Shown in pieces: positions 28,801-58,197 of a stretch of DNA of 64,000 bases. Position numbers and translations under genes: made by a program. Within the stretch, counting starts at the first letter, position 1. Every line of letters begins with the position of its first letter. Where the stretch lies: the sequence record NC_061451.1; one strand, written 5' to 3'. The notes beneath the pieces were generated by a model. The model was not told the DNA's origin. It ran no database searches and saw only the letters and a program-made list of their open reading frames with translations.

Positions 28801-29292
28801 TTAGGCAAATCGCCCACCACGCCATGCGGCCTTGATGAGCAACTTAGCCACGATTTCGTTCTTCATTGTCTTTCGCTTTGCATTGCTACGGACAAATGCA
28901 GAGCCGAACTTATTCACGACAATCAAACCAACACCGCTCACGCGTATGCGTTCAATTATTCTATCGCCGTGAGATTCAAACAGGGCTTCGTCTATGGCAA
29001 AGTACATACGCATACAAAACGGTAGATACTTGTGCCACTTCTTATCAGTATTGAAATCGGCCCAGCAACTCTTAACCTCAGTGATAATCATATCGCATTT
29101 GGTATTAAGGCAGAACACGTCTGCTCTTAGGTTGCCTTGCTTAATCAAACCCAGCTCAACATGACAGGAATAACGTTTGTCAATCCAATAACGCTGAGCT
29201 GCCTCAGTGATAAACATAGTCCTATCAGGACGACTCATTGAGGTAAAGACTGCCTGTGTTTGACGTTCAGCTTTGCGGCGCTTAAAGGCCAT
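28801..29292 (-). CDS. mmcB: MmcB-family PD-(D/E)xK DNA repair nuclease
   Basis: RADVFCL...IITEVKSCWADFNTDKKWHKYLPFCMRMYFA. Confidence 0.8.
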   Translation of the reverse strand: MAFKRRKAERQTQAVFTSMSRPDRTMFITEAAQRYWIDKRYSCHVELGLIKQGNLRADVFCLNTKCDMIITEVKSCWADFNTDKKWHKYLPFCMRMYFAIDEALFESHGDRIIERIRVSGVGLIVVNKFGSAFVRSNAKRKTMKNEIVAKLLIKAAWRGGRFA

Positions 29293-29737
29293 ACGAGTCG
29301 ATAATGTCCAGCGCCTGAGCTAAAATTGGGCGGAGTTTCTTGTCCACCTTCTTTAGAGCTTTATCAGCACTGAACCACTTACGCTCACGCATGCCTGCTT
29401 CATCGTATTCAGTCAGTTCCTGCTTGACCTTCATGATGAACCATTCAACGTTCTGGGCGCGGCCGGTCTTGCCTTTAACATACTTCATAATGTCGATGAA
29501 GTCTTTAGGCTTACCGAGAATGCCGCCTTCTTCCATGGCTTCTTTAAGCGCGGAATCCAGTGGCGTCATACCTTTCTCAACGCCACCTTTAGGGAATCCC
29601 CAATTGTTTCCGTGTGTGGTGCGAATCAACAAGATCTGCACTTCACCTTTTTTCTTTTTGTATGGGACAACGCCTGACTGCTTACGCGCTTTCTTTTCAG
29701 AAGGCAGCTTAGCAGAGAGTGACACATTCAGCATCAT
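29282..29737 (-). CDS. Nudix hydrolase
   Basis: QSGVVPY...ILLI...WGFPKGGVEKGMTPLDSALKEAMEEGG (Nudix box with R to K), EAGMRERKWF. Confidence 0.9.
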   Translation of the reverse strand: MMLNVSLSAKLPSEKKARKQSGVVPYKKKKGEVQILLIRTTHGNNWGFPKGGVEKGMTPLDSALKEAMEEGGILGKPKDFIDIMKYVKGKTGRAQNVEWFIMKVKQELTEYDEAGMRERKWFSADKALKKVDKKLRPILAQALDIIDSYGL

Positions 29738-30234
29738 AGATAATCACTTCCACGAGGCATGTTCACTTCCCAGCGTCCAGAGTTGTCTACCCACAGACCG
29801 TTATCCTGCAGGCGCTTGTACGCATCATACAGAGAGCATGAGGCGAGCACTTGCAGTTCGGTGCCGAAGTCCGACATTGAATAGCTATAGATAGATTCAG
29901 GCAAATATGACAGGCGTTGGCCTTCATAAGAGTCGTGAACAATACAACCATCAGCATCAGTTACAACGGCGTGAGATGCAACAATGGTAGGCCCCAGAAC
30001 AACGATACGATAGTCTGGGTGCTTGTTGTAGTTGCGCTGAATGAACAACGCAGCTTCTGCAAACGGACGTGCGACTTGCGCAGCGCGTGTGCAGTTTTGT
30101 TCAAACGCAGATTCAGACAAAGAGCGTGCACCAGTCAGATTCATGGCCGATGCAAAAATCATTGTTGTCAGATCGTTTGGTGCGATAGCTGTGGGGAAGA
30201 ACTTCGTGCCCCACGCTTGATCTAAAGAAAGCAT
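29734..30234 (-). CDS. Hypothetical protein
   Basis: 166 aa, RBS AAGGAG, preceded by GCTAATTT; contains SLSESA. Confidence 0.65.
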   Translation of the reverse strand: MLSLDQAWGTKFFPTAIAPNDLTTMIFASAMNLTGARSLSESAFEQNCTRAAQVARPFAEAALFIQRNYNKHPDYRIVVLGPTIVASHAVVTDADGCIVHDSYEGQRLSYLPESIYSYSMSDFGTELQVLASCSLYDAYKRLQDNGLWVDNSGRWEVNMPRGSDYL

Positions 30235-30272: not shown

Positions 30273-30273
30273 G

Positions 30274-34177: not shown

Positions 34178-34600
34178 TTAGCCCTCGGCGTCAAGCTCCA
34201 GCGCAATGGCTTTCAGTTTCGCAGCAAGCAACTTAATCTCAGAAGACTTGGCTTGCATGTTAAAGCCACCACGCCCTGGTTTTATTTCGGAGTCTTTCTT
34301 CGTGTTGTACCACTTGCGCACTTCTACGACACGGTTACCGGCATCATCGTTAGCGAGATCAACAGACAGGAAGGTGTTAGGGCCGATAGCGATGCGAAAC
34401 AGCTCTGGCGCAGAAGTCTCTTTGCGAGTCTTCTTTGCTTTCTCTTTCACAGGCTCAGACTTTTTAGACTTCTTAGCAGGCTTCGCTAACTCTCCCTTAG
34501 CAGGCTTCTCTGCCTCACGTTCAACAGGCTTAACCTTGCTCAGGGTCTTCTTGATCTTCTTCGCTTTCGCGCCAACGATTTTGCCGTTAACCATTGCCAT
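34178..34600 (-). CDS. Lys-rich protein with a PC4/YdbC-like ssDNA-binding domain
   Basis: Basic tail, then IAIGPNTFLSV...VEVRKWY...KPGRGGFNM resembling the PC4 'DIRxW/Y...PGKKGISL' motif. Confidence 0.65.
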   Translation of the reverse strand: MAMVNGKIVGAKAKKIKKTLSKVKPVEREAEKPAKGELAKPAKKSKKSEPVKEKAKKTRKETSAPELFRIAIGPNTFLSVDLANDDAGNRVVEVRKWYNTKKDSEIKPGRGGFNMQAKSSEIKLLAAKLKAIALELDAEG

Positions 34601-34890
34601 TAGATTTGCGTCCTCTTAACTTGCTTTATTGCAGCACTAGGACGAGGCTGGGGAATAGCAACGAGTGCGCCTGCCAGCATCTCGGATGAGTGAACCCATC
34701 CGTTAGCTATCAGAATATTCCGCCAGTATGCGTTAGTGCTGAGTTCTTTGTACGACAGCAACTGAGGATTTCCCTCCATAGATGCGTCGATACGTTTGGT
34801 CGTGAACAACGATCTGTCCACGTCATCGAATACAGAAACAGACAGCGGGTCAATTCCCCACTTGTCTATGTTAGCGATAGTTTCAGCCAT
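34600..34890 (-). CDS. Baseplate wedge protein, T4 gp53 / LysM-like
   Basis: PQLLSYKELSTNAYWRNILIANG...GALVAIP. Confidence 0.7.
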   Translation of the reverse strand: MAETIANIDKWGIDPLSVSVFDDVDRSLFTTKRIDASMEGNPQLLSYKELSTNAYWRNILIANGWVHSSEMLAGALVAIPQPRPSAAIKQVKRTQI

Positions 34891-40430: not shown

Positions 40431-41108
40431 TCAGTCCTCTACAATAATAAGCACAGGTCTAACAGCATCATCGAACTTGATGAACGCAGCGCCAACAAGA
40501 TAGCCACCCTTCTCTACTTGTTTCACGACAGCCTTTTCAAGATCTGTTTCCCACTTATCGCGCTGTGCGGGTTTGTAAGAAGCAAACGTCTCAGAAGCAT
40601 CGTAGTAGTTATAGGTACCACCAGTAGGCATTGGGATACGTGCAAGGAACTCTAAGCGACTACAGTTCTTGAACGGGGTCTTGCGTAGCTCTTGCGTCAG
40701 CTTGGTGTTCTCTGATTTAGAGCCAGGCACAGCGGTGAATACTTTCTTAGGCTGAGGCTCACGAGGAGCAGCAGGCATCTTCTCACGCGCTGGCGTATTC
40801 TTGTCGCTGGCTTTCTTAACACGAATACCAGAAACAGTCCCTGTGAATGGGCGACTGCGACCAAGCAACGAACGTGCGGCCGTAGCGTCAACAACAAACA
40901 CAACAGACGGGTCATCACGGTGCAGCACATAGAACTTGTTACGTGCAGCGGCCTTGATACCGAATACGTCTTTGTCCTCAATATCCGCTTCGTGTTCTTT
41001 GTTCTCGATACTGACCTTGCGCTTACCTTCAAAGCGATACCAGTCGCAGTCATTGATAGACACGATAGGTGTTTTGCGTGAAGCACTCTCGCTCAGAAAA
41101 ATAAGCAT
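40431..41108 (-). CDS. Hypothetical protein, putative internal head protein
   Basis: Starts MLIFLSESAS, followed by the shared ~65-aa domain. Confidence 0.6.
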   Translation of the reverse strand: MLIFLSESASRKTPIVSINDCDWYRFEGKRKVSIENKEHEADIEDKDVFGIKAAARNKFYVLHRDDPSVVFVVDATAARSLLGRSRPFTGTVSGIRVKKASDKNTPAREKMPAAPREPQPKKVFTAVPGSKSENTKLTQELRKTPFKNCSRLEFLARIPMPTGGTYNYYDASETFASYKPAQRDKWETDLEKAVVKQVEKGGYLVGAAFIKFDDAVRPVLIIVED

Positions 41109-44502: not shown

Positions 44503-44907
44503 CTAGTCGAGACGCAAGCGAATCAGCGAGCTAGACTCAGAATCAACAACGGTAACGTCATCTTCATCGTCCAGGTCTTCTTCGTCTTCAACATCATCCG
44601 CAGAATCATCTTCGGAGGTATTGAGACTAACTACTTCATCGTCATACAACGACTCGGCTCTTTCTTCCTCGGCAGTAAGCGCTAAGGCCGCAGACAGAGC
44701 AGTAACCGAATCAGCCATGCTTGATGCGCTACTCACGGAGTTAACGAGGCAATTAGCTTCGAAGTTATCAGTGAGTTCGCATTCAAGGAACTGATCAGCA
44801 TCTGGCGCAACAGCAGCTTGAGTTAACAAGCGAGCTACGTCCAACCACTGCCCGTCACGCGCGGCGACAATTGCCAGTGCAGCTAAGGAACCAGATAAGG
44901 TCTTCAT
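44503..44907 (-). CDS. Small acidic head-associated (scaffold-like) protein
   Basis: 134 aa after the capsid gene; acidic tract ending VDSESSS. Confidence 0.6.
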   Translation of the reverse strand: MKTLSGSLAALAIVAARDGQWLDVARLLTQAAVAPDADQFLECELTDNFEANCLVNSVSSASSMADSVTALSAALALTAEEERAESLYDDEVVSLNTSEDDSADDVEDEEDLDDEDDVTVVDSESSSLIRLRLD

Positions 44908-46884: not shown

Positions 46885-48957
46885 TTATGAGCAGCGCAGA
46901 CGGGCCAGTTTATCTTCGAACGAGTCAGTGGAAGCTGAACTCTGTGATTGAATAGGTGCACTATCTTCGTCACCCAGAAGCTGCGCTGCAACGCTTGGTT
47001 GCTGCGGCTTAACAGGTGCGGTGACCTGCTGTTGAACTACAGGCTGAGCCTGCTGCACGGTACCGGCTGCGGCTTCGATTGACTGTGCAACTTCGTTCTG
47101 TGCAGTTTCAGACATAGACATAAGAGCCTGTGCTTTTGCCAGAGAAGTTGTCAGGAAATCTTTACCATGCGCGATAAACGCGTTTTGAATCAGCGCGTTC
47201 GGGTCTTTGATGCCTGCGGCAGACAGAGAGCGAACGAGAGAATCAACGATCGGGTTACGCACTTCACCCCAGTAGTTTTTGGTGATACCCAGCTGAGCAG
47301 AAGACAGGGCAGCAATCAAACGTTCCTGATGGGAAGCAACAGTGTCGTTGATAGTAGACGATACGCTGGTGGTAGCTTCGTTGATGCGAGCATCAGATTC
47401 AGCAACCAGCAATTTGTCTACAGGCATTTCGATTTGATACGGCATAAAGCCATACGCTTCGACTGTACCTACAACACCGCTTTGAACCAGGCTGTGTGAA
47501 ACGGCACGGATGAAATTATCAGTTGCGAAAGATTTACGCGCAACTTCTTCACCAACAACGTTAGACACAGAGTTGAACGTGGCGCGAGCAACTGGCTGGC
47601 CGTCGTAGTACATGTGTACCGATTCGACTTTACCGCCGTTAGAACGGCTGAGGCTTACCAGGGTCGGGTCCAGTTCGCCGTACTGAGCTTGTACGGTAGA
47701 CAGGCTGTCGAAGGTGCGATTAACGACTTTAGATTCAGAATCGAAGTCTTCATCGTCGAGGTCGAGATCATCTTCTTCCAGATCTTCGTCATCGTCGAGG
47801 TCTTCGTCGTCTTCATCGTCAGCGCCAGACTCAGAATCGAAATCTTCGTCTTCGTCGTCTTCGCCATCCAGATCGTCTTCATCCAGATCTTCGTCATCAT
47901 CGCCTGCACCAGATTCGGAGTCGAAATCTTCGTCTTCCAAATCTTCGTCATCTTCGAGGTCTTCCTCGTCTTCGTCGTCCAGATCATCTTCATCCAGATC
48001 TTCGTCGTCGAGGTCATCCTCTTCGTCTTCGTCGAAGTCATCTTCATCGAAGTCGTCTTCATCTTCATCACCATCAGATGATTCAGAATCAAAGTCGTCG
48101 TCAGAATCTTCGTCTTCGTCGTCGAGGTCCAGATCGTCTTCGTCCAGGATATCAATGTCGCTGTCGCTATCATCGTCACCGGAGTTAGATTCAATCGGCT
48201 CGTCGACCAGCGCCGCAGAGCAATGCGCACAGAAGACAGGCTCTTCATCGGAGCTTACAGTAAACGGCTGTTCGCATTTAGCGGAGCAGCTATAGATGTG
48301 AGCTTCGACGGTACCGTCAGCGGCAGCAGAAGACAGAGCAGTAACAGCTTCAGGAGCGTCCTGAGCGTCACAGCTATCAACAGCCTGGCCGGTGTACGGG
48401 TCGAATTTGGCAACAGTAGCAGCGTTGAAGCTACCAGTGTTGGACAGCGCTGTGAACGTTTGAGCACCAGACAGGGCCTGCGCGAAGTTGCGTTGAGCTT
48501 CTTCGGCAGTCTCGCCAGTAGCGATCAGGCTCGCGTGTTCAATCTGTTCATCAGCGTTTGCGCTCTCAGCAAGGAACTGTGATACGCGTTCATCAGTGAT
48601 TTCTGACAGGTCAGCAGAGCACGACGGGCAGCAGCCCTGAACGAGCGAAGCACTGTCGCTGATAACGTGGCTACCACAACCATCCAGACAGATAGTGTAA
48701 TGCGCCTTCACGTCACCAGCAGAAGACTGAGACTGAACTTCGGCTTTCTCAACCAAATCAGGATGCTCATCCAGCAGTTCGTTACCGCCGGTTGGGTTGT
48801 AGAGGTCAGCGCCACTTTGCGAAGCAAAGCCCACACCGTCAGAAGAACCATAAATCATTAAGTTCTGGCCTAACGCAGTGCGACGAAAGTTCTCTACTGC
48901 CTGATTATGGTTTTTACCGACACACAGGATACCCGCGAGTTGGGTAATCTTTGGCAT
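46885..48957 (-). CDS. Prohead core / scaffolding protein with long Asp/Glu tract
   Basis: ATG at 48957 with GAGG RBS; two Cys-rich knuckles, a ~150-aa acidic tract punctuated by FDSES, helical C-terminus. Confidence 0.7.
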   Translation of the reverse strand: MPKITQLAGILCVGKNHNQAVENFRRTALGQNLMIYGSSDGVGFASQSGADLYNPTGGNELLDEHPDLVEKAEVQSQSSAGDVKAHYTICLDGCGSHVISDSASLVQGCCPSCSADLSEITDERVSQFLAESANADEQIEHASLIATGETAEEAQRNFAQALSGAQTFTALSNTGSFNAATVAKFDPYTGQAVDSCDAQDAPEAVTALSSAAADGTVEAHIYSCSAKCEQPFTVSSDEEPVFCAHCSAALVDEPIESNSGDDDSDSDIDILDEDDLDLDDEDEDSDDDFDSESSDGDEDEDDFDEDDFDEDEEDDLDDEDLDEDDLDDEDEEDLEDDEDLEDEDFDSESGAGDDDEDLDEDDLDGEDDEDEDFDSESGADDEDDEDLDDDEDLEEDDLDLDDEDFDSESKVVNRTFDSLSTVQAQYGELDPTLVSLSRSNGGKVESVHMYYDGQPVARATFNSVSNVVGEEVARKSFATDNFIRAVSHSLVQSGVVGTVEAYGFMPYQIEMPVDKLLVAESDARINEATTSVSSTINDTVASHQERLIAALSSAQLGITKNYWGEVRNPIVDSLVRSLSAAGIKDPNALIQNAFIAHGKDFLTTSLAKAQALMSMSETAQNEVAQSIEAAAGTVQQAQPVVQQQVTAPVKPQQPSVAAQLLGDEDSAPIQSQSSASTDSFEDKLARLRCS
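47710..48190 (-). repeat. Asp/Glu low-complexity coding repeat with recurring FDSES units
   Basis: Degenerate (tcttcgtc/tcatc)n periodicity; encodes DEDFDSESGA...DLDEDDLD near-tandem units. Confidence 0.85.
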
Positions 48958-49035: not shown

Positions 49036-50148
49036 TTAGACTTTTCTGCTATCAATATCTGACTGAGGAATATAGCGATTTTCGAAGTATTTATTCACTA
49101 CTTCGACACCGTTTAGCGTATAAACGTTACGCAAACTATCTCCCCATACCATTAGTTCTGCCAGCGTTGCAAAGTGCTCCGTAGGCACGGATTTAATGGT
49201 CAGTGCATTGTTCGAATCAGGATGGATTCGCTTACCACGAATGGCCTGATCAAACTTCATACGGTCTACGTTACGCAGCATAGTATGGTCCACAAAGTGA
49301 GCCAATTCATGCGTCATAACATGGGCCATACTTTTGCTGTTATATCCACCCAGCAAACGAACAAGCTGTTGTGGACTAATAGCGATAACACCGTACATAA
49401 AACCACGAATCATGTACGTGCTAATGTGAGAACCGCCTACATCGTTACCTTCCTGCCCGCCCAGAATAGAAACGTACAGACGCTTAAACGGCAGATTAAC
49501 GTTCAGCCCTACAGCAGGCATTACGTTGTCCTGGATATCCTTTAGCACGAATGCTGGTGGACTAACACCGTTGACTGAGATGTTTAGGCCAGGGATATTC
49601 AGTTCATCTGCGCCACGCACTTCAAGATGTACCGTACCACATTTAGGCAGCGGTTGAATTGCGTAGTTGTTTGGCGTACCACCAGCATAAGCAATATCAG
49701 AGTATTGCAGAGGCGTAAATTTACCGAACTGAGGCCTGTCAAGTTCTCGACGTTGACGCGCTTCTTTGGACGCACGATCATCATCGATAGGAGTATCAAC
49801 AGGAGGTTTTGGCTCGGGTTCAGGCGGTGGGATTGGCACTTCGGCAGCGGCAGGCTTAGGCACTTTGACAGGCTTAGGCTTAGCAGACTTCTCCTCGAGT
49901 GGAGTAAAGTCAAAGCTATCAAACAACGCATCAGGCTGAGCAGCAAAAGGTCTGCTATTAGCCAGTATCATTCCAGCGCTCTCCCCGCTGATTGCAACAG
50001 CTTGAGGGTACTTAGGGTGAGCGATGTAATAGAGGTCATCGTTAACTTGATGGAGACCTACGACCTCGCGGGGCTGCATACGCACACCATTTGAAATCAT
50101 AGTATCTCCACCTAAGTAACGGACGAATTTGTAGTCCGTTATATCCAT
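49036..50148 (-). CDS. Zinc metallopeptidase-like protein (HExxH) with the shared N-terminal domain
   Basis: Start MDITDY at 50148 (TAATG coupling); Pro-rich linker; HVMTHELAHFVDH and downstream EHFATLAE. Confidence 0.7.
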   Translation of the reverse strand: MDITDYKFVRYLGGDTMISNGVRMQPREVVGLHQVNDDLYYIAHPKYPQAVAISGESAGMILANSRPFAAQPDALFDSFDFTPLEEKSAKPKPVKVPKPAAAEVPIPPPEPEPKPPVDTPIDDDRASKEARQRRELDRPQFGKFTPLQYSDIAYAGGTPNNYAIQPLPKCGTVHLEVRGADELNIPGLNISVNGVSPPAFVLKDIQDNVMPAVGLNVNLPFKRLYVSILGGQEGNDVGGSHISTYMIRGFMYGVIAISPQQLVRLLGGYNSKSMAHVMTHELAHFVDHTMLRNVDRMKFDQAIRGKRIHPDSNNALTIKSVPTEHFATLAELMVWGDSLRNVYTLNGVEVVNKYFENRYIPQSDIDSRKV

Positions 50149-50927
50149 TAACGCATCCGCAGCAGGTGTTCTTTGTACGTTGCAGCACAAGCAAACGCTG
50201 GGTCATCCACAGAGCTACACTCGAAACCAGTGAGGCCCTTACAATCACGATACACCAGGCGGCCTGTACGTGCATCCAAATACGTAGGCTTGTTGAACGC
50301 TGTATGCGAGCAGAAGTTACGATTCTTCGGTGTCACCATCTGACCACAGATACTGCATTTATAAGCACGGTAGGTTGTGCCCTTGCTGTACGTGTTCAGT
50401 TCACCGCTGAGAATACGGTCACAACGTTCCTTGCAGCGCGTGCGGTCAAACGCCAGCAACAGAGTCAGACGCGCATGATTGCCACGGAAGTTTTTCAGCT
50501 TAGACAGGTTCGAGTCAAAGATCATGCCCATTGCTTGGCGATAGTCTTTGTTGTTGTGCTCGATAAACGTCGGCTTACCAATGAACGTCTGATACGCAAG
50601 GCGTCCTTGATCAGGGTTAAACGTCAACCATTCCTGCAAGCTGAATGCATCACCGTTAGTGTTCGGCAGCTCCGTGATGTTTACCACAACAGGCGCAATG
50701 ATATAGTCACGGATATCACGCGAGGTGTTGTACATCTCAGCAGCTTTAGGCAGCCACACGTTAACGTCGAGGTTAAAAGATCCCGTCTCAATACCGAAAC
50801 GCGAAGCATCAACACGAATAGACTTAGCGTTTCGGCTAACATCTTCTTTGTGCATATCAATCGCGTTCAGTCCGACGAGGCCCATGTCTGAGGTATCAAA
50901 CGACTCAGACTTGATGAGCTGGGTCAT
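50148..50927 (-). CDS. Putative prohead (head maturation) protease
   Basis: FIGKPTFIEHN (His), YSKG (candidate catalytic Ser), CSICG...CSH zinc motif; upstream of scaffold and capsid genes. Confidence 0.7.
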   Translation of the reverse strand: MTQLIKSESFDTSDMGLVGLNAIDMHKEDVSRNAKSIRVDASRFGIETGSFNLDVNVWLPKAAEMYNTSRDIRDYIIAPVVVNITELPNTNGDAFSLQEWLTFNPDQGRLAYQTFIGKPTFIEHNNKDYRQAMGMIFDSNLSKLKNFRGNHARLTLLLAFDRTRCKERCDRILSGELNTYSKGTTYRAYKCSICGQMVTPKNRNFCSHTAFNKPTYLDARTGRLVYRDCKGLTGFECSSVDDPAFACAATYKEHLLRMR

Positions 50928-51354: not shown

Positions 51355-51355
51355 G

Positions 51356-52210
51356 TTAACCTCGAAGTGCACCACGCGCCCAAGACTTAGCGAGAGCCAG
51401 AGTCATGCGGCTAGGGTTCTGGAGTTTGACTTCACCCCGATGAACAGCAGTAAACGGTTCATTAGGGTTCTCGCTGCGTCCAGAACGATACGCAGATTCA
51501 TTGAAGCCGTCAAACAAAGTAACCAACCAGCCAGTTGACTTGTCAGAGCATTCGCCGCACTTGTTGTCCCAGCTAATCTTACCGCATGTACGACCACCAG
51601 CATTGATAGCGTATGACACACGGTCTTTGTCAGAGTAAACGTCCTTAGCACGAATGGTCTTGAACGTCACGCGAGACGAGGACTCGGAGCGCGGCATCAT
51701 GCGTGCTTTAATCGCTTCTGCATCAATCGATGACCAGAACGATTCAAACAGCATACCCAGCTTCTGATCGATAGGCAGCTTGAGTCCATTGATTTGGGCA
51801 ATGGTACTGGAGCTATCATTGATAACGCGATTCAGGAAGTAGCCACCAATGATTATCGGCAGCTGTGTTCCCTGTGAGCCTACAGTGATACCAGATTGCT
51901 TGCAGTAGATCTCAGACAGACCGATAGCGAGACGCGCAAGAACCTTGAACGTCTCTTTTTCTGTCGTGTTTGAGATTTCAGTATACAGACGCGCTGCAAT
52001 GTTCGGCACGACTGTACGCTTGGCAACGCTGGCAATATCTTCGGCTGTGATAGTCTGACCAAGTTTCTTCTTGGCCGCTAACGCAAAGGCGTTATACAGG
52101 CTGGCTTTGTTCTCCGCCGTCAGGGCTTCGTTTAGCTTGCTGATCGTCGTCTCCGCGCTGCTTTTCAGACTCGGAGTTTGAACTGTTTTGAGTCTCGCAA
52201 CTTTCGGCAT
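51356..52210 (-). CDS. Hypothetical two-domain protein
   Basis: AGGAG RBS; helical N-domain and beta C-domain separated by RSESSS. Confidence 0.65.
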   Translation of the reverse strand: MPKVARLKTVQTPSLKSSAETTISKLNEALTAENKASLYNAFALAAKKKLGQTITAEDIASVAKRTVVPNIAARLYTEISNTTEKETFKVLARLAIGLSEIYCKQSGITVGSQGTQLPIIIGGYFLNRVINDSSSTIAQINGLKLPIDQKLGMLFESFWSSIDAEAIKARMMPRSESSSRVTFKTIRAKDVYSDKDRVSYAINAGGRTCGKISWDNKCGECSDKSTGWLVTLFDGFNESAYRSGRSENPNEPFTAVHRGEVKLQNPSRMTLALAKSWARGALRG

Positions 52211-53324
52211 TGGAGTTTTTCTCCTGGTTGAGGGCTTGCTTCGCTAAAATCCCAAGCAGGCCAGAGGCTTTAATTTCTGTCTCAACGTCAAGCCCACGAT
52301 GCAGACTGAGTTGAGCTAAATAGTTCAATGCGGGTTCGACCATATTAAGATTACGACAACCCCAATAGGCACATTCGTAACATAGGTCTAAATTAACAGA
52401 GGTCTGGTCAAACAAGAAACTTTTTGGATTCTGTTGCGCAACAGACAGTCCCTGGATAGCCATGCCCACAGAGTTGATCATATCGTCACGGCGATAGAAA
52501 ATATCAGACAGCATCGCGTAGCATTCAATACGATCAGAGCGGGCTGCAATAGCACGGTAGCAGCAGTTAACGGCCTCCTGAATAAAGCCCTGCTTGAACG
52601 TTGCTTTTGACAGTTCCAGATTAGCCACAGCAACATAGTCAGACCAAGTTGCTAGTTTGGTCAGACGTGCCACTTCGGCGCGTGCATCATCGAGCAGGTC
52701 AGCACGGTCGTAGTAAGCAACCGAGTAGCACAGCTCACGCGCATAATAGAACGAGCAACGCTGGTCACGAGGCCAATCGCCCGCATCACGCGCAAGCTCC
52801 ATGAGATAACCACGAGGCTTAGTGTGATCGGGGAAATGGTCAGTAGCGAACTCAGCACGCACAGTATGCGGTGGGTTACCTTCACGAATACGCATCAACA
52901 CTTCATGCGCACGGTAACGCCACGTATACGCTCGGCTCTTGTATGCTTTCATCTGGTCATACTGGCTATCGCCGTTACGCATCAGAATCCAAACACCATC
53001 AGCCTGTTCAATGTCAGGCATCTGACGTAACTTCTCAACCCAATCTGGGTCGTCGAAGCGTTCATCAATGTCCAGCCAAACGATTAAATCATCTTCATGG
53101 AATGGCGCAGCGGCCAGGTCGCGACTTGCACCCAGATTGCGTTCTTCGGAGATGTCCGTAGAGTGATACAACGCTGGGTGCGCGAACTCGGAAACAATCT
53201 GAGTCGTTGCATCAATGCTGCCTGTGTCCACGATACTGATAGCGTCAGCAGCAGACACATGCTTCAACCACTCGGCCATATTCTTTTCTTCATCACGGCA
53301 GATAGCCGCTACGCAAATTCTCAT
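52092..53324 (-). CDS. Family 2 glycosyltransferase with TPR-like C-terminal helices
   Basis: ICRDEEKN...IVDTGSIDAT...NLGASRD...WLDIDE (DxD); TPR-like FYYARE / EAVNCCYRAI / ECYAMLS. Confidence 0.85.
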   Translation of the reverse strand: MRICVAAICRDEEKNMAEWLKHVSAADAISIVDTGSIDATTQIVSEFAHPALYHSTDISEERNLGASRDLAAAPFHEDDLIVWLDIDERFDDPDWVEKLRQMPDIEQADGVWILMRNGDSQYDQMKAYKSRAYTWRYRAHEVLMRIREGNPPHTVRAEFATDHFPDHTKPRGYLMELARDAGDWPRDQRCSFYYARELCYSVAYYDRADLLDDARAEVARLTKLATWSDYVAVANLELSKATFKQGFIQEAVNCCYRAIAARSDRIECYAMLSDIFYRRDDMINSVGMAIQGLSVAQQNPKSFLFDQTSVNLDLCYECAYWGCRNLNMVEPALNYLAQLSLHRGLDVETEIKASGLLGILAKQALNQEKNSNAESCETQNSSNSESEKQRGDDDQQAKRSPDGGEQSQPV

Positions 53325-53335: not shown

Positions 53336-54244
53336 TTATACAAGAACGTTACCGCTATCCCACCACTTCTTGCCATAGATTTCGGACAGGCGGTAGTCAA
53401 GCACGATTGGTTGGTCAAGATCGACCTGAAGGATATCGCGACCTAGTGCAGCGCTATAAACTGTTTTCTCCTCAGTGTATACGCGTATCTCTAGTTCCAT
53501 GTCGCCTTGCGAATACTTGGGAACGAACGGCACATTCAGATCGCCATTGAACCCCTGACCGAGCGTATCGTCAAAGTAAGTAGACATACGAATCTCGGTG
53601 CCCTGATTGATAACTGTAGGTGCGTACACCGTGCGATTGTTATACGCCGTGTAGTCAGCTACCGTGGACTGTTGAATCAGGCGGCGCTTATAGATGCGCG
53701 TTACGCCTTTGTCGTCCACTACCGTACGATACTGATTGTAGAACCAGTTGATCTCATAGAACTTAACAGGCTTGAGGCCCGCAGATGAAACCAATGTCGC
53801 AGTCATACGGTGATAGGTCTTCTCCGTATTCAGACGGTAGAGCAGAATCTTAAACGCGTACCATTGGTAAACGTCTAACGTGATTGAGCCTGCATCTGAT
53901 TGCTGAGTACCGTTAGTGAGGATATACGAGAAGCAATCGCCACCAACGTAACCGCTACGGGGATCGTAAATGAACGCATCACTAAAGCTATTCAGTTCGA
54001 CAGTACCCAACAGTGGGTCGCTCACTTTGATTGCAGCAAGGCGCCAACCACGCTGGGCTGGAACCTTGTCGAGAACGCCTTCTGTGGGACTGTGACCTGT
54101 TAGCTCGTCGCGTGCGCCTTGCAGAATCTGATCGATAGTGATTTCAGTTTTACCTGAGTTCTTCACACGTATCGTTCTGTTTGGTGCTATTGGCTTATAG
54201 TTGCGCCAGTAGTCAAACGTACAAGGCAAAGAGAGCATAGTCAC
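53336..54244 (-). CDS. Virion protein with an Ig/cadherin-like domain
   Basis: P..GTVELNS..AFIYDPRSGYVGGDCFSYILTNG...GSITLDV. Confidence 0.6.
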   Translation of the reverse strand: MTMLSLPCTFDYWRNYKPIAPNRTIRVKNSGKTEITIDQILQGARDELTGHSPTEGVLDKVPAQRGWRLAAIKVSDPLLGTVELNSFSDAFIYDPRSGYVGGDCFSYILTNGTQQSDAGSITLDVYQWYAFKILLYRLNTEKTYHRMTATLVSSAGLKPVKFYEINWFYNQYRTVVDDKGVTRIYKRRLIQQSTVADYTAYNNRTVYAPTVINQGTEIRMSTYFDDTLGQGFNGDLNVPFVPKYSQGDMELEIRVYTEEKTVYSAALGRDILQVDLDQPIVLDYRLSEIYGKKWWDSGNVLV

Positions 54245-56211
54245 TCCAACTTATATTTACGTCGGAACTCTGCTAGACCCATGACAGGAATGCCTTTGTC
54301 CATGGCCTTCTGGAGTTTCGCAGAACCCGAGCCTGGGTCTTTGGCGATAAGAATGGTTGTATCTGCTTTCATGCTATCTGAGGCAGTACCACCAAGCTCA
54401 ACGATACGCTGCATCAGTTCACGATCACGAATGCCAGTGAATGCAACGTTAACGCCTTTCAGCTTAGAACTCTTCACCTGAACGCGCTTCGGTGCCACCA
54501 GCTTAACACCGATTTCATTCGCAAGCTGATACGCAGAGACACACGCAAGAGCAATGTCAGGTGATTTCGTTTTGATGCCGTGAATATCCGAGATAGCTTT
54601 AGCGAGCGCCAGAGGATTCTGTTTGCGCACTAGCTTGTCAAGGTCAGGCACGCTATCGACCACTTTATCAAACGTAGTGTTAGCGCCTCGCATGAAGTAC
54701 GGCGAGCACGCTTTAAGCCACGTATTGACAGCAACGCTTGAGCGTAATGCTTTGAGGTCTTTCGCAAGCTGAGCGCCACGCGAGTCACCAACCACTTCAC
54801 GCAGCACACTGATAGATGCAGCAAACAAACGGGCAGGCGTATCAATGCCAGACTCTACGAGCAGCTTCGACGTACTCGGTCCTGTGTTAGCAACATCCAA
54901 TCCTTTGAGGAATGAACTGAGCAGTCGAGTAGTGCCTACCTCAGTCTTGGTATTGATAACGAACTCAACGCCATTGACTTTGTATGGCACATCAGGCAGC
55001 TTTGGCTTCTTCGCAGGCTTGAGAATCTCCATGATGTATGGGATTACCTTACCGCTACGAATCAGCTTAACGGTAGCACCTGGGCCAAGAGGTTTCTTAG
55101 CGTGAGGTGCAGTCGCTTTGCCTTTAGGCTTGAGATAGCCGTGCTCAACATAGAATCCATTGTGACCATTAGCACGCTGCACAGTGACGCCGCCCGTCAT
55201 CAACGTCGGTGGGAAGATGATAACAGGCTGCAAGATACCGTACTTGGTTTCTTGGTAGATAACATCCTCTACCTTAACTATCACTGTGTCAGCTTCTGCA
55301 TTCATTTTAAACTTGAATGCGTGCTTTGGATTGGATGCAGTCGCTTTAGGGCTTGGTACATCTTCCGTGAGTACAACACCATCCAGCTCGTAGATAGCTT
55401 TAGACAGACGGCGCTCCAAGAACGCGATCAACTCATCTTCTGAATTGAAGCGCTTTGGTGGCGTATGCCTAACAACTTCGAATCCCCAGCGCTCCAGCAG
55501 GGCGAACTGCTTAGACTGTTTGAGTGTAGCACCATCACCGCCGATGATAGAAAAGCACACCATGCGGACGTACTTGAACTCGGATGCTGTTTCGAAGTTA
55601 CGCACAAGTCCCGACGCAGCGTTACGCGCAGCCTTGAAGCGACCACCAGCAGACTCATGCATCTTAGCCATGAATGTCTTTTGAGGAATGAGTGCCTCAA
55701 AGCGCAACACCGTCTGACCTCTGACTGGAATCTTTTTAGGGATTTTCATCGCAGGGATATGATGGGATACGTCTTTACCGTGAGTAGCATCACCACGAGT
55801 GTACGCCTTTACAGGGACACCGTCTTGATACACAATCTCAAGGCTCAAGCCATCGAGCTTGTCGGTTGCAACGTAGTCCACATCTTTCGACAGTGCTTTG
55901 GCAATCTGCTTCGAGCCAGCCTGAAACTGATTGAGACTTGCCATAGGTACAGGCAGCTTAACATCAGCATCATCACGCTGGCCAATCTTACGAGCCAGCT
56001 TCGACTTAGGCCATTTAGCGTCGATGTAGTTACGAATTGAATCGTACACTGCATCGCTCACCAGACCTTCATCATCCGTATGATATGCGTTGTCCAGAGC
56101 GGTTATTAAGTTACGCACTTGCGTCTGGTTCAAGGTGTCCAAGACCTTTTGAGGGTTCTTGGACAGTTGCTTGAGACTAACAGAGGCAGAAATAGAAAGC
56201 CTTACTTTCAT
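54241..56211 (-). CDS. ligA: NAD+-dependent DNA ligase
   Basis: Domain Ia YH...SDAVYD, KxDG motif TDKLDG, YTRGD, ELDGVV, AFKF, RANGHN, IRSGKVIP, HhH and C-terminal BRCT (AFTG.RD); no four-Cys zinc finger seen. Confidence 0.93.
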   Translation of the reverse strand: MKVRLSISASVSLKQLSKNPQKVLDTLNQTQVRNLITALDNAYHTDDEGLVSDAVYDSIRNYIDAKWPKSKLARKIGQRDDADVKLPVPMASLNQFQAGSKQIAKALSKDVDYVATDKLDGLSLEIVYQDGVPVKAYTRGDATHGKDVSHHIPAMKIPKKIPVRGQTVLRFEALIPQKTFMAKMHESAGGRFKAARNAASGLVRNFETASEFKYVRMVCFSIIGGDGATLKQSKQFALLERWGFEVVRHTPPKRFNSEDELIAFLERRLSKAIYELDGVVLTEDVPSPKATASNPKHAFKFKMNAEADTVIVKVEDVIYQETKYGILQPVIIFPPTLMTGGVTVQRANGHNGFYVEHGYLKPKGKATAPHAKKPLGPGATVKLIRSGKVIPYIMEILKPAKKPKLPDVPYKVNGVEFVINTKTEVGTTRLLSSFLKGLDVANTGPSTSKLLVESGIDTPARLFAASISVLREVVGDSRGAQLAKDLKALRSSVAVNTWLKACSPYFMRGANTTFDKVVDSVPDLDKLVRKQNPLALAKAISDIHGIKTKSPDIALACVSAYQLANEIGVKLVAPKRVQVKSSKLKGVNVAFTGIRDRELMQRIVELGGTASDSMKADTTILIAKDPGSGSAKLQKAMDKGIPVMGLAEFRRKYKLE

Positions 56212-56250
56212 GCTTTTCTCCGATCGACATTAACACTCTTGTTTACAGTG

Positions 56251-58197
56251 TTATGATGCGATAGGGTCCTTGTTGACCTCGTAATCTTCCGCCATGTCGT
56301 ACACGCGATTGAACAGCTTAGGCGCCATATCTTTCACATGCTCGGCATAGTCAAACAGGTTCTGCTTACGCGCACGATTGACACGTACCTGACGTACTTC
56401 GTCTGGGCTATTCGTAATGTCGTACAGCGTATACACAACGATGTTATCGGAGGAATTATGGGTGCTTACTTTGAGGACTACCCAATCGCGTTGCAGCTTA
56501 GCATCAGCCTTGAAGCGGAGGACGTCGCCCTCTTCGGCTTCATCTGCACGCGCATCAGGAGTAGACTTGTTAGTTGCGGCAATCTTCTTCGCAGTTTCAG
56601 CAGCTTCTTTCTCTGCCTCAGCCACATCAGAATCTTGGTCTTCATCCGCTTCTGTTTCGTCTACGGCGTCAGAGGTATCGTCAGCGGAGTCGTCGGCTTC
56701 TTCGTCGTCATCTCCAGACGTATCTTCCTCGTCATCTCCTCCGTCGTCGGCATCATCAGATTCCACATCGGAGTCGTCATCTGAATCGTCGGAGCTATCA
56801 TCCCCATCCTCATCATCAGACTCTGAATCGCTATCGTCAGCATCTTCTTCTGCATCTGAATCGTCCTCTTCCGTTTCGTCGTCTGGGTCAACGTCACCGC
56901 CTTCAGGGTCATCCTCTTCCAGCTCGGAGTCATCGTCGAGGTTAGCCTCTTCTGAGTCGTCTGGCTCATCATCCTTGGTTGAGTTCTTAGCAGAGCCGCC
57001 TTTCTTGCGAACCTTAGACTTAGGAGCAACTTCCTCTTCGTCATCATCTGGCTCATCAATGTCAGACAGGTCAAGCTCGGAATCGACTTCGTTGTCCGCG
57101 CTATCGTCACCACCGAACATAGAGCTAACGGTGTCTTCCAGACTGAACACATCACCTGCAAACGGGCTACGTTGAAGAATGTCTTCAAGGCGTTGCTCAT
57201 CGAGGTCCTGCTCAAGGTCCAGATGTTCTTCGATAGCATCATCGAGGTTTTCATGCTCAATGACTTTAGGCAGACGACGACGATCATTCAGGCCAGGGTC
57301 ATCAGAGTAGATGGTACGCTGAGGTCCTGTAGGCGCTTCAATCTCACCGTCACGCACTTTGCGTCTGAGGTCACGCATCTCTGCGCTACGCTCACGAGCT
57401 TTCTTACGTGCTTCCTGTGCGAGTTCCTTGCGCTGTTGTTTGCGCTCAAGGGCAGATGCCTCACGACCTAAACGTTCAGCTTCCTCAAGTTCACGGCCTT
57501 CGCGATGGCGAGCGCGACGAACCATACGACGATACTGTTTGATAGTATCAACATCAACACTACCAACAGGCCAGTCATTAAGAGGCAGAATGTTTGTGTC
57601 ATGCACAATCAGATCGTACTGGGCGTCATCGACTTTCAGGAACAGGCCTTCTGTGTTGATAACGATACCGCCTTTACCTTGACGCAAGAAACGCACGCCA
57701 ATCATATCGTTGCGGTACATCTTATAAATACCCTTTGTGGTCTTCACAGGATATTCATTGCCCGGCACCATGCGCCATTGATAGTTGGCAAAGTCAACGC
57801 CATACACAGCTTCTGACTTAACCGATTTCGGCATAAAGCGAGGAGCATCAAACAGGGTACGATTGATCTTACGCTCAAGGCTCTTAGCGCCCGCAACGCG
57901 TGCAGTAGTACCAGCCTCACGTTTAACCACAGCTGGTGGCTTACGCAACTTAGAGCTACGTTCAATGAGGAACAGACCTGTCGTTTTGTCGAGAGGGAAA
58001 TCGACGTGCGGCATATCTGGGAAAATCAGTGTATAACGACCACCATTCCTGAGTGGCAGAATACCAAAAGTGTCGCCATTACGAATCATACGTTTGTGTG
58101 ATCGCTGCGTCACCTCTCGTCCACGTGAACCAGTAAACTGCATCCACGCGTACTTCGATACGGCATCTTCATATGATGCGGATTCGGAGAGTACCAT
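56251..58197 (-). CDS. Large hypothetical protein with acidic tract, putative internal head protein
   Basis: Starts MVLSESAS, two copies of the shared domain, charged coiled coil, ~170-aa Asp/Glu tract. Confidence 0.65.
   Translation of the reverse strand: MVLSESASYEDAVSKYAWMQFTGSRGREVTQRSHKRMIRNGDTFGILPLRNGGRYTLIFPDMPHVDFPLDKTTGLFLIERSSKLRKPPAVVKREAGTTARVAGAKSLERKINRTLFDAPRFMPKSVKSEAVYGVDFANYQWRMVPGNEYPVKTTKGIYKMYRNDMIGVRFLRQGKGGIVINTEGLFLKVDDAQYDLIVHDTNILPLNDWPVGSVDVDTIKQYRRMVRRARHREGRELEEAERLGREASALERKQQRKELAQEARKKARERSAEMRDLRRKVRDGEIEAPTGPQRTIYSDDPGLNDRRRLPKVIEHENLDDAIEEHLDLEQDLDEQRLEDILQRSPFAGDVFSLEDTVSSMFGGDDSADNEVDSELDLSDIDEPDDDEEEVAPKSKVRKKGGSAKNSTKDDEPDDSEEANLDDDSELEEDDPEGGDVDPDDETEEDDSDAEEDADDSDSESDDEDGDDSSDDSDDDSDVESDDADDGGDDEEDTSGDDDEEADDSADDTSDAVDETEADEDQDSDVAEAEKEAAETAKKIAATNKSTPDARADEAEEGDVLRFKADAKLQRDWVVLKVSTHNSSDNIVVYTLYDITNSPDEVRQVRVNRARKQNLFDYAEHVKDMAPKLFNRVYDMAEDYEVNKDPIAS
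56600..57110 (-). repeat. Asp/Glu/Ser low-complexity coding tract
   Basis: Degenerate triplet periodicity (tcatc/tcgtc) encoding DDSDSESDDEDGDDSSDD... Confidence 0.8.

What the first reader, a model, noticed from the sequence alone, without database searches (positions are those of the whole stretch)
29282..58197. S-x-S motif shared by head proteins and by enzymes: possible Ser-directed maturation and capsid-targeting code
Seen: S-[E/Q/N/L/I]-S recurs in head proteins: capsid (LALSQSTG, LVHSQSNA), scaffold (ASQSG, QSQSS twice, ESNSG, FDSES four times spaced through the acidic tract), 44503..44907 (DSESSS) and the protease N-terminus (IKSESF). A tighter [L/V/A]-S-x-S-A form is at or near the N-terminus of 40431..41108 (MLIFLSESAS), 56251..58197 (MVLSESAS), the Nudix hydrolase (MMLNVSLSAK) and the DNA ligase (MKVRLSISAS), and internally in 25974..27737 (IASESAA) and 29734..30234 (SLSESA). 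Known: T4 gp21 and phiKZ gp175 cleave after Glu in short motifs, and T4 internal proteins carry a cleaved N-terminal capsid-targeting sequence. Inference: this phage's protease may cut at S-x-S, and the motif may tag cargo, including an NAD+ ligase and a Nudix enzyme, for packaging and injection.
Basis: partly seen in the sequence, partly recalled or inferred. Interest (0 to 1): 0.75.

Follow-up and report, generated by a model that had tools for sequence, protein, structure and literature searches.

The report
Serine-x-serine head-protein processing motif
A short hydrophobic-x-Ser-x-Ser motif in this Erwinia jumbo phage is real, conserved and concentrated in head proteins and at the N-termini of likely packaged proteins, so it is probably the cutting signal of the phage's head-maturation protease; this specificity was not found described in the papers searched here.

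Summary
The window is Erwinia jumbo phage pEa_SNUABM_7 (window = record − 62,000).

**Observation.** All 14 quoted strings exist. S-x-S is not enriched in the capsid protein or the protease taken alone. Across six phage lineages it is the most over-conserved a-x-b pair in head proteins: 18 of 39 sites against 4.7 expected (p=1.4e-7), and 14 of the 18 have a variable middle residue. A hydrophobic residue sits two positions upstream in 16 of 22 conserved sites, so the real motif is Φ-x-S-x-S-[small].

**Evidence for a protease site.**
- In PaBG and Lu11, homologous sites carry A-x-A instead. That argues against Ser modification and for a small-residue pocket.
- The enzyme (50148..50927) models as a prohead serine protease with invariant H124 and S181.
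- Capsid site VHSQS↓N (residues 64–68) lies in a low-confidence loop. Cutting there removes 18.4% of the mass; PaBG capsid protein loses about 20%.

**N-terminal tag.** Genome-wide, Φ-x-S-x-S-A occurs 10 times within the first 30 residues against 1.4 expected. Carriers include KMPT-N paralogues and a 1,944-aa SNF2 helicase whose PaBG orthologue is a virion protein.

**Weak points.** The ligase tag is in only 3 of 6 lineages and the Nudix tag in 5 of 6, so packaging of those enzymes is poorly supported. No cleavage has been shown experimentally.

The parts
50148..50927 (-). Prohead serine protease (RefSeq gp151), the proposed enzyme. Its own N-terminal site IKSESF lies at 50898..50915.
   Evidence: PHROG 'head maturation protease'. 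No Pfam family matches. 1,162 homologues; H124 and S181 are invariant. AF2 model pLDDT 88. Top PDB fold hits are T4 gp21 5JBL. 131 viral-model hits include many prohead proteases. S-x-S-F is kept in 6 lineages and in PaBG.
46885..48957 (-). Scaffold-like 690-aa protein with Cys-rich N-terminal part, poly-acidic tract and helical C-terminal part. It carries 13 Φ-x-S-x-S sites listed, from 48811..48828 (FASQSG) to 46936..46953 (IQSQSS).
   Evidence: S-x-S 22 against 8.4 and Φ-x-S-x-S 15 against 2.0. 13 S-x-S sites are conserved in six lineages. S-x-S is the top non-acidic a-x-b pair here, and A-x-A is the top pair in PaBG/Lu11 homologues. The gene lies between protease and capsid genes. The PaBG homologue gp82 is not among the 14 identified virion bands.
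44963..46063 (-). Major capsid protein (366 aa). Site 1 ALSQST at 45956..45973 (residues 31-36). Site 2 VHSQSN at 45857..45874 (residues 64-69).
   Evidence: PHROG major head protein. Related to phage G gp27, 6WKK. Site 1 is S-x-S-T in 65 of 95 homologues and D-x-K/R-T in 13. The linker around site 2 has S-x-S in 61 of 94 homologues against 26 expected. Residues 66-71 have pLDDT<50. Cutting after S68 removes 18.4% of the mass; PaBG capsid protein loses about 20%.
44503..44907 (-). Small acidic head-module protein (134 aa) with VNSVSS (44728..44745) and a C-terminal DSESSS (44527..44550).
   Evidence: Φ-x-S-x-S 3 against 0.6 expected. S57-x-S59 is conserved in six lineages. PaBG and Lu11 homologues carry A-x-A-S strings (LATAS, EAVAS, VAMAS).
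40431..41108 (-). KMPT-N protein (225 aa) with N-terminal tag FLSESA at 41082..41099.
   Evidence: Pfam KMPT-N at residues 21-85. The tag is [FL]-x-S-[EAV]-S-A in six lineages.
56251..58197 (-). KMPT-N protein (648 aa) with N-terminal tag VLSESA at 58177..58194.
   Evidence: Pfam KMPT-N at residues 16-81. The tag is S-[EVLQ]-S-A in six lineages. PaBG's similar N-terminal KMPT-N protein gp217, next to its ligase gene, has MIAEA directly upstream of its KMPT-N domain.
25974..27737 (-). KMPT-N protein (587 aa) with internal IASESAA at 27330..27350, directly upstream of the domain.
   Evidence: Pfam KMPT-N at residues 139-201. [AS]-S-[ETM]-S-A-A is kept in 4 lineages.
49036..50148 (-). Fourth KMPT-N protein (RefSeq gp150). 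It has no N-terminal tag. One conserved internal site YNSKSM lies at 49327..49344.
   Evidence: Pfam KMPT-N at residues 20-79 of the long ORF. The PHROG alignment starts at M15. The site is conserved in six lineages. The corrected start is at 50148.
54241..56211 (-). NAD-dependent DNA ligase with N-terminal LSISAS at 56182..56199. Doubtful member.
   Evidence: Pfam ligase domains. The tag is present in SNUABM_7, SNUABM_5 and JA11. It is absent in Alexandra, Y3, Yoloswag and PaBG.
29282..29737 (-). Nudix hydrolase with N-terminal VSLSAK at 29708..29725. Doubtful member.
   Evidence: Pfam NUDIX. V-S-L-S-A is kept in 5 of 6 lineages and lost in JA11. The hydrophobic residues sit at -1 and -3 rather than -2.
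28801..29292 (-). MmcB-like protein with FTSMSR at 29230..29247 (residues 16-21). The site is conserved, but it may simply be part of the domain.
   Evidence: F-x-S-x-S-R is kept in six lineages. The Pfam MmcB-like domain covers residues 17-141.

Best explanation
Φ-x-S-x-S-[small] is the recognition motif of the phage's prohead serine protease (50148..50927). This enzyme is a distant member of the HK97 / T4 gp21 / assemblin fold.

Proposed mechanism:
- Inside the prohead, the enzyme binds an extended substrate strand whose alternate side chains face it: hydrophobic at P5, Ser at P3 and Ser at P1.
- It most likely cuts after the second Ser.
- It fragments the acidic scaffold-like protein at a dozen or more sites.
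- It trims its own N-terminus.
- It removes the capsid protein's N-terminal ~68 residues at VHSQS↓N.
- It clips short N-terminal leaders from proteins that stay in the head. These include three KMPT-N paralogues in the window and, elsewhere in the genome, a 1,944-aa SNF2 helicase and several unknowns.

Status of each step:
- Shown here: existence of the motif, its enrichment, its conservation with a variable middle residue, its switch to A-x-A in other lineages, and the protease fold with conserved His and Ser.
- Taken from the literature: processing of virion proteins in the relative PaBG, and virion location of the PaBG helicase orthologue.
- Inferred: that this protease cuts at the motif, which bond is cut, and that tagged proteins are packaged.
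For: - Unbiased scan: S-x-S is the top of 145 a-x-b pairs for six-lineage conservation in head proteins, 18 of 39 against 4.7 expected (p=1.4e-7). The middle residue varies in 14 of the 18.
- Head S-x-S conservation exceeds other Ser-Ser spacings and exceeds S-x-S in non-head proteins. Φ at -2 is present in 16 of 22 conserved sites, p=6e-5.
- The scaffold-like protein has 15 Φ-x-S-x-S against 2.0 expected.
- Lineage switch: A-x-A is the top pair in PaBG and Lu11 scaffolds. Homologous sites swap, e.g. IESNSG / EEATAG / ERATAS. The N-terminal tag VLSESA compares with MIAEA on PaBG's similar KMPT-N protein gp217.
- Protease: H124 and S181 are invariant. The fold matches T4 gp21 and many prohead proteases.
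- Capsid site 2 lies in a pLDDT<50 loop. S-x-S persists in that hypervariable linker, 61 of 94 against 26 expected. The 18.4% mass loss matches about 20% reported for PaBG (PMC7412058).
- N-terminal Φ-x-S-x-S-A occurs 10 times against 1.4 expected. It is conserved in JA11.
- PaBG gp202, the orthologue of the tagged helicase, is a virion band and keeps an LNSLSA tag.
- The register agrees with SPN3US gp245: A-X-E with Val at P4 and Ser at P1' (PMC10052503).
Against: - No experimental N-terminus or cleavage site exists for this phage or any relative that I could find.
- Taken alone, the capsid protein and the protease show no S-x-S excess.
- Capsid site 1 sits in a very conserved block and is D-x-K/R in a subclade. 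That pattern looks more like a structural pair than a cleavage site.
- Part of the signal is not independent: the FDSES duplication and KMPT-N paralogy.
- The fold match to solved structures is weak (E=0.05, TM-score 0.50 normalised to the target), and no Pfam protease family matches.
- The position of the hydrophobic residue differs between lineages: -2 here, mostly -1 in Lu11.
- Several conserved S-x-S sites lie in tail or enzyme domains where cleavage is unlikely (tail sheath S346, ligase BRCT S628).
Confidence: 0.65

Rival explanations
1. The motif is a docking or assembly contact rather than a scissile site. Short Φ-x-S-x-S strands would bind the scaffold, capsid interior or protease and so recruit proteins into the prohead. 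Cleavage, if any, would occur elsewhere.
For: - Capsid site 1 lies in an invariant block (G37, N40, A41).
- It shows a coupled S..S to D..K/R change typical of interacting side chains.
- The tags sit directly upstream of the KMPT-N domain in three paralogues.
- The N-terminal position matches a targeting role.
Against: - A dozen copies spread through a scaffold's acidic tract, and one in a disordered capsid linker at the place that fits the observed mass loss, fit degradation sites better.
- Small-x-small with a hydrophobic anchor is a classic protease subsite pattern.
- The register parallels the SPN3US A-X-E↓S motif.
Confidence: 0.15
2. The recurrence is a by-product of history and composition, with no shared function: Ser-rich low-complexity sequence, internal duplication in the acidic tract, paralogy of KMPT-N proteins, and a general preference for Ser/Ala codons near start codons.
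For: - Two FDSES copies arise from an 84-nt duplication.
- Three tag carriers are paralogues.
- Ser is slightly commoner in N-terminal windows, 7.8% against 6.7%.
- The capsid protein and the protease alone show no excess.
Against: - Local-composition shuffles still give 10 against 1.4.
- Conservation of both Ser with a variable middle residue is specific to spacing 2 and to head proteins.
- The same motif occurs in unrelated proteins: capsid, protease, helicase, gp180, gp254.
- There is a concerted swap to A-x-A in PaBG and Lu11.
- The two LSESA tags use different codons.
Confidence: 0.08
3. S-x-S marks sites of Ser modification (phosphorylation or O-glycosylation), perhaps by the glycosyltransferase that is conserved in the head gene module.
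For: A beta-1,4-glycosyltransferase gene (52092..53324) keeps its place near the protease gene in all relatives examined.
Against: - Homologous sites in PaBG and Lu11 carry Ala-x-Ala, which cannot be modified in this way.
- Many sites lie in a scaffold that is not expected to remain in the virion.
Confidence: 0.04

Closest known systems
T4 prohead protease gp21 with its substrates, including the cleaved N-terminal capsid-targeting sequence of the internal proteins
   Same: - The protease model's best solved-structure match is gp21.
- The gene order protease, scaffold, capsid is the same.
- There are many sites in the scaffold, a propeptide on the capsid protein, a candidate self-trimming site, and very short N-terminal leaders that end at the site on proteins retained in the head.
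   Different: - T4 cuts after Glu in L/I-x-E. Here [LIV]-x-E and [AGS]-x-E show no excess or conservation, and P1 is predicted to be Ser (Ala in PaBG and Lu11).
- No Pfam S77 match.
- Targeting by the leader is untested here.
phiKZ gp175 and SPN3US gp245 (giant-phage prohead proteases; S/A/G-X-E and A-X-E)
   Same: - Small residue at P3, any residue at P2, Ser favoured at P1', Val at P4 (PMC10052503). This is almost the Lu11/PaBG string V-A-x-A-S.
- N-terminal propeptides occur on many head and ejected proteins.
   Different: - P1 is Glu there and small (Ser/Ala) here.
- The capsid protein here is a compact 366-aa HK97-type protein.
- The phage belongs to the PaBG/Lu11 'Lupandier' group, not the phiKZ-like group (PMC7412058).
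HK97-type (COG3740/XkdF-like) prohead proteases and herpesvirus assemblin
   Same: - Many predicted-structure matches are annotated prohead serine protease, COG3740 or XkdF.
- Conserved His then Ser about 57 residues apart.
- Assemblin also takes a small P1 (Ala) followed by Ser, with a hydrophobic residue upstream (established knowledge).
   Different: - No Pfam S78 or S21 match.
- This protease has a Cys-rich insert after the catalytic Ser.
- The motif has Ser at both P3 and P1.
Signal peptidase I '-3, -1 rule' (Ala-x-Ala)
   Same: Small residues at -3 and -1 preceded by hydrophobic residues. This is an analogy of subsite logic only.
   Different: - It is an unrelated enzyme family and compartment.
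- The leaders here are far too short to be signal peptides.
- The main substrate is a cytoplasmic scaffold.

Membership tests
Prohead serine protease of the HK97 / T4 gp21 / assemblin fold | Characteristic fold | tested here: met
   AF2 model pLDDT 88. The top three PDB hits are T4 gp21 5JBL (E=0.05, probability 0.85, TM-score 0.50 normalised to the target). There are 131 BFVD hits at E<=1e-3, including many annotated prohead proteases and phage G gp19. The match to solved structures is weak; the match to predicted viral structures is strong.
Prohead serine protease of the HK97 / T4 gp21 / assemblin fold | Conserved catalytic His and Ser | tested here: met
   H124 and S181 are invariant in 56 diverse homologues. 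Intein-like inserts sit right after H124 in several homologues. Catalysis itself is not testable here.
Prohead serine protease of the HK97 / T4 gp21 / assemblin fold | Match to a curated sequence family (Pfam S77, S78 or S21) | tested here: not met
   No Pfam hit for the protein. Among 56 homologues, one has a weak Peptidase_S78_2 hit at E=0.11. No PDB sequence hit.
Prohead serine protease of the HK97 / T4 gp21 / assemblin fold | Gene next to scaffold and major capsid genes | tested here: met
   Order protease, KMPT-N protein, scaffold-like, virion protein, capsid in this phage and in Alexandra, Yoloswag, JA11, Y3, SNUABM_5, Lu11 and phiRSL1.
Glu-directed cleavage motif of T4 gp21 / phiKZ gp175 / SPN3US gp245 | Glu at P1 after L/I-x or S/A/G-x | tested here: not met
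   [AGS]-x-E is not enriched: scaffold 11 against 18.5, capsid 4 against 5.4. AxE, SxE, GxE, LxE, IxE and VxE show no excess conservation.
Glu-directed cleavage motif of T4 gp21 / phiKZ gp175 / SPN3US gp245 | Multiple sites in the scaffold or propeptides, and N-terminal propeptides on head proteins | tested here: inconclusive
   The distribution of the motif fits, but no cleavage has been measured. PaBG virion proteins are reported as processed, without mapped sites.
T4-type capsid-targeting sequence (cleaved N-terminal leader) | Short N-terminal leader ending in the protease site | tested here: met
   Φ-x-S-x-S-A occurs within the first 30 residues 10 times against 1.4 expected. It is conserved in JA11 for gp083, gp141, gp157, gp180, gp183 and gp254. 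This holds only if the motif is the protease site.
T4-type capsid-targeting sequence (cleaved N-terminal leader) | Carriers are found inside the virion | tested here: inconclusive
   Only indirect evidence: PaBG gp202, orthologue of the tagged helicase, is virion band 1. There are no data for this phage, the ligase or the Nudix enzyme.
T4-type capsid-targeting sequence (cleaved N-terminal leader) | The leader is necessary and sufficient for packaging | not testable with these tools
   This needs reporter fusions and virion analysis.
Phage scaffolding protein (for 46885..48957) | Position between protease and capsid genes; extended or acidic composition; absent from mature virions | tested here: inconclusive
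   Position and composition fit. The PaBG homologue gp82 is not among the 14 identified virion bands. There is no Pfam scaffold family, and the PHROG family is named 'ATPase'.
KMPT-N domain proteins (Pfam PF20294) | Domain match above the gathering score | tested here: met
   25974..27737 (71.2 bits), 40431..41108 (68.4), 49036..50190 (72.8), 56251..58197 (62.9); the cut-off is 28.9 bits.

The most novel reading that the evidence does not exclude
The N-terminal Φ-x-S-x-S-A leader is a portable processing-and-encapsidation tag. It would mark a set of enzymes for delivery with the DNA: the SNF2 helicase, the KMPT-N proteins and, in some lineages, the NAD+ ligase and the Nudix hydrolase. That would make a readable and engineerable cargo code for a whole clade of jumbo phages, read by a prohead protease with a Ser/Ala-directed specificity not described before.
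Probability: 0.25. Interest if true: 0.8.

Novelty: new variant of a known kind. Interest (0 to 1): 0.6.

Why it matters
Known cleavage rules exist for T4, phiKZ-like phages, HK97 and a few others. I found none for the PaBG / Lu11 / Erwinia-Dickeya jumbo phage group, although PaBG virion proteins are known to be processed.

A Ser/Ala-directed small-x-small rule would have several uses:
- Mature capsid, portal and internal proteins could be predicted from sequence alone in about a hundred phage genomes and many metagenomic contigs.
- It would explain SDS-PAGE and mass-spectrometry discrepancies.
- It would nominate packaged and probably injected proteins: a giant SNF2 helicase and the KMPT-N family.
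- It would give a direct handle for testing how cargo enters large capsids.
- It shows that specificity in this protease fold can move from Glu to small residues while keeping the P3/P1 logic.

Tried and rejected
- Simple enrichment per protein gave nothing for the capsid protein or the protease. Conservation was the informative test.
- Sequence searches of the protease against Pfam and the PDB found only a spurious zinc-finger-like match to its Cys-rich insert.
- T4/phiKZ-type Glu motifs were tested and rejected.
- The DNA-repeat explanation for the N-terminal tags was rejected because the codons and upstream DNA differ.
- The Ser-modification reading was rejected because of the A-x-A replacement.
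- Literature searches for KMPT-N, for phiRSL1, Y3 or Alexandra proteomics, and for phage G capsid processing gave no mapped termini. The Y3 virion proteome paper is not in the held library.
- PaBG gp83, the virion protein encoded upstream of the scaffold gene, is not detectably a KMPT-N protein. It therefore gives no support for KMPT-N proteins being virion components.
- I did not test the scaffold of the D-x-K/R capsid subclade for a matching motif switch.

Full report
**Identity of the window.** An 8-kb probe (window 44000-52000) matches Erwinia phage pEa_SNUABM_7 at 100% (NC_061451.1, Snuvirus, 265,635 bp). Window coordinate equals record coordinate minus 62,000. All genes in the window are on the minus strand. 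Capsid-protein relatives run from Alexandra, Y3 and Dickeya AD1 (about 88% identity) through Yoloswag, pEa_SNUABM_5 and Dickeya JA11 (71-77%). More distant are Pseudomonas phages PaBG and Lu11 (45-47%) and Ralstonia phiRSL1 (35%).

**Check of the observation.** RefSeq and PHROGs call it 'ATPase', but it has no Pfam domain. It consists of a Cys-rich N-terminal part, a long poly-acidic tract and a helical C-terminal part.

Shuffling each protein gives the following:
- S-x-S is not enriched in the capsid protein (2 against 2.9) or the protease (1 against 1.0).
- It is enriched in the scaffold-like protein (22 against 8.4).
- Φ-x-S-x-S is enriched in the head group as a whole (23 against 5.4). Other window proteins give 36 against 27.6 (p=0.06).

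**Conservation is the decisive evidence.** I took orthologues as stop-to-stop ORFs so that annotated start codons could not bias the result. In Alexandra, Y3, Yoloswag, pEa_SNUABM_5 and JA11 both Ser are kept at 18 of 39 S-x-S sites in head proteins. Other Ser-Ser spacings in the same proteins give 22 of 107 (Fisher p=0.003). S-x-S in non-head proteins gives 4 of 49 (p=5e-5).

In an unbiased scan of all 145 a-x-b pair types with at least 8 occurrences, S-x-S is by far the most over-conserved: 18 against 4.7 expected (p=1.4e-7). The middle residue varies in 14 of the 18. Examples:
- capsid LS[QSE]ST
- protease [KRPE]S[EHQK]SF
- gp141 [LIV]S[EAV]SA
- gp157 S[EVLQ]SA

Of 22 sites conserved in all six lineages, 16 have F, I, V, L, Y or M two positions before the first Ser (background 0.31, p=6e-5). 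The residue after the second Ser is mostly A, S, G, T or N. The motif is therefore better written Φ-x-S-x-S-[small].

**Non-independence.**
- Two FDSES copies (residues 345 and 373) derive from a degenerate 84-nt duplication.
In 40431..41108 and 56251..58197 the tag precedes the domain by 9-12 residues. In 25974..27737 the internal IASESAA (130-136) is followed at residue 139 by the domain.
- A fourth paralogue, 49036..50148, has no tag.
- The two LSESA tags use different codons and have unrelated upstream DNA, so selection acts on the protein.

**Lineage switch.** In PaBG and Lu11 the most enriched non-acidic pair in the scaffold homologue is A-x-A (z=4.7). In the four Erwinia/Dickeya phages tested it is S-x-S (z=5.6-6.2). 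Homologous positions swap directly:
- IESNSG / EEATAG / ERATAS
- FDSESK / EEATAS / VATASS
- capsid LSQST / LSSST / LSSAT
- VLSESA on the KMPT-N protein 56251..58197, against MIAEA on PaBG gp217, a similar N-terminal KMPT-N protein encoded next to PaBG's ligase gene

PaBG keeps S-x-S at the protease N-terminus (MMSRSF) and at the helicase N-terminus (LNSLSA). Both positions therefore accept Ser or Ala. This rules out a phosphorylation or glycosylation reading and points to a small-residue binding pocket.

**The enzyme.** The 259-aa product of 50148..50927 has no Pfam or PDB sequence match, but it has 1,162 homologues. H124 and S181 (in Y-S-M-G) are invariant among 56 diverse homologues. Several homologues carry an intein-sized insert directly after residue 124. 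The AF2 model (pLDDT 88) gives T4 gp21 (5JBL) as its three best solved-structure matches (E=0.05, probability 0.85, TM-score 0.50 normalised to the target). It also gives 131 predicted viral structures at E<=1e-3. These include PaBG, phiRSL1, phage G gp19 and many entries named prohead serine protease, COG3740 or XkdF. It is a prohead serine protease of the HK97/gp21/assemblin fold. It falls outside curated sequence families.

**Capsid protein.**
- *Site 1* (ALSQST, residues 31-36) lies in a strongly conserved block. Among 95 homologues it is S-x-S-T in 65 and D-x-[KR]-T in 13. That coupled change could equally reflect a structural pair, so site 1 is uncertain.
- *Site 2* (VHSQS↓N, residues 64-69) lies in a hypervariable linker (26% mean pairwise identity against 56% in the core). 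The linker nevertheless keeps an S-x-S in 61 of 94 homologues against 26 expected, and Φ-x-S-x-S in 31 against 6.9.
- In the AF2 model, residues 66-71 are one of only three segments with pLDDT<50.
- Alignment to phage G gp27 (6WKK) places the start of that 280-residue chain near residue 70.
- Cutting after S68 removes 18.4% of the mass. The PaBG paper reports that its capsid protein loses about 20% on maturation. It also reports that several virion proteins appear in multiple bands (PMC7412058).

**Which bond is cut.** This cannot be read from sequence. I favour cutting after the second Ser, for three reasons:
- P5, P3 and P1 would all face the enzyme on an extended strand.
- The following residue is small.
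- The Lu11/PaBG string V-A-x-A-S matches the measured SPN3US logo V-A-x-E↓S except at P1 (PMC10052503).

**N-terminal tags, genome-wide.** I fetched the rest of the genome and called 296 genes of at least 60 aa. Against shuffles of each protein's own N-terminal window, Φ-x-S-x-S-A falls within the first 30 residues 10 times against 1.4 expected (0 of 1000 shuffles reach it). Counting motif starts within the first 24 residues, its density is five times that in the rest of the proteome. Carriers outside the window include:
- gp180 (VKSESA)
- gp198 (VVSESA)
- gp183, a 1,944-aa SNF2 helicase (IISTSA)
- gp253 (FVSLSA)
- gp254 (VPSLSA)
- gp083 (YTSVSA)

The portal has EFLSQSA at residue 49. In JA11 the tags of gp083, gp141, gp157, gp180, gp183 and gp254 are kept. 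So are the related Φ-x-S-x-S sites of gp126, the protease gp151 and gp210, where the following residue is not Ala. PaBG_00202 is the orthologue of gp183 by synteny and by 28.6% identity over about 1,850 residues (query residues 91-1942). It is the 221-kDa top band of the PaBG virion, and it keeps a tag in an otherwise unalignable N-terminus. This is the best indirect support that tagged proteins are packaged.

**Ligase and Nudix.** The ligase tag S-[IL]-S-A-S is present in SNUABM_7, SNUABM_5 and JA11. It is absent from Alexandra, Y3, Yoloswag and PaBG, where the ORF simply starts later. The Nudix tag V-S-L-S-A is present in five of six lineages and lost in JA11. Both have their hydrophobic residues at -1 and -3 rather than -2. 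They may be occasional substrates, but packaging of these enzymes is not supported beyond that. SLSESA in 29734..30234 is not conserved. FTSMSR in the MmcB-like protein is conserved in six lineages but lies inside the Pfam domain.

**Comparison with known systems.** The layout matches T4, phiKZ and SPN3US: many scaffold sites, a capsid propeptide, a candidate self-trimming site on the protease, and short leaders on retained proteins. The defining Glu at P1 of those systems is absent. The predicted specificity (Ser/Ala at P3 and P1 with a hydrophobic anchor) resembles assemblin's Ala↓Ser and the signal-peptidase -3/-1 rule in logic only. I found no paper in the held library that defines a cleavage motif for this phage group.

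**Verdict.** The reading as a protease motif is the best explanation (confidence about 0.65). The 'cargo code' is plausible for the KMPT-N proteins and the helicase and weak for the ligase and the Nudix enzyme. It is a new variant of a known kind and can be tested directly by virion mass spectrometry.

Noticed in passing
window 50148..50927 and homologues P0002, P0004, P0010 and others: Many homologues of the protease are 520-930 aa long and match in two pieces split right after residue 124 (FIEH). This looks like an intein inserted at the catalytic His.
   Followed up: partly
window 49036..50190: The RefSeq start of gp150 (50100) cuts into its KMPT-N domain. The Pfam and PHROG alignments fit a start at the ATG at 50148 (MDITDY...), which overlaps the protease stop codon by one base.
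   Followed up: yes
window 46885..48957: The product name 'ATPase' (RefSeq, PHROG 20988) is probably wrong. There is no ATPase domain. The protein has CxxC-type Cys pairs, a poly-acidic tract and the position of a scaffold gene.
   Followed up: partly
window 44963..46063, residues 33-35: In 13 of 95 capsid homologues S-x-S-T is replaced by D-x-[K/R]-T, a coupled change at both positions. Whether the scaffold motif also changes in that subclade was not tested.
   Followed up: partly
window 52092..53324: A beta-1,4-glycosyltransferase gene keeps its place a few genes from the prohead protease gene in all relatives examined (Alexandra, Yoloswag, JA11, Y3, SNUABM_5, Lu11, PaBG). Its role is unknown.
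   Followed up: no
window 24657..25973: A 1.3-kb stretch has no annotated gene in a tightly packed genome. No tRNA was found. One strong terminator-like hairpin lies on the minus strand at 24732..24711, just upstream of the PAAR gene's start on the coding strand. No sigma-70-like promoter was found.
   Followed up: partly
window 13470..14102; record 146664..147911, 166356..167477 and 207712..208524: Four proteins start with MSL[IV]K (MSLIKV, MSLIKL, MSLIKI, MSLVKL). Three of them carry the S-x-S-A tag 9-14 residues in. They may share an N-terminal module.
   Followed up: no
window 54241..56211 and orthologues in L003, L004, L005, L018, L019: Presence or absence of the ligase's 10-residue N-terminal extension does not follow capsid-protein similarity: SNUABM_5 has it and Yoloswag lacks it. 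This suggests repeated loss or exchange.
   Followed up: partly
L019:12904-13983 (pEa_SNUABM_5): The orthologue of gp150 is annotated 'peptidase family M34' by its depositors. That fits the metallopeptidase association in the KMPT-N domain's name. I did not verify it.
   Followed up: no
window 34600..34890; record 5351..5569: Several RefSeq product names look like mis-transfers: a 96-aa 'tail sheath', and a 72-aa 'DNA ligase' between the terminase and portal genes. The latter carries VKSQSS at residue 15.
   Followed up: no
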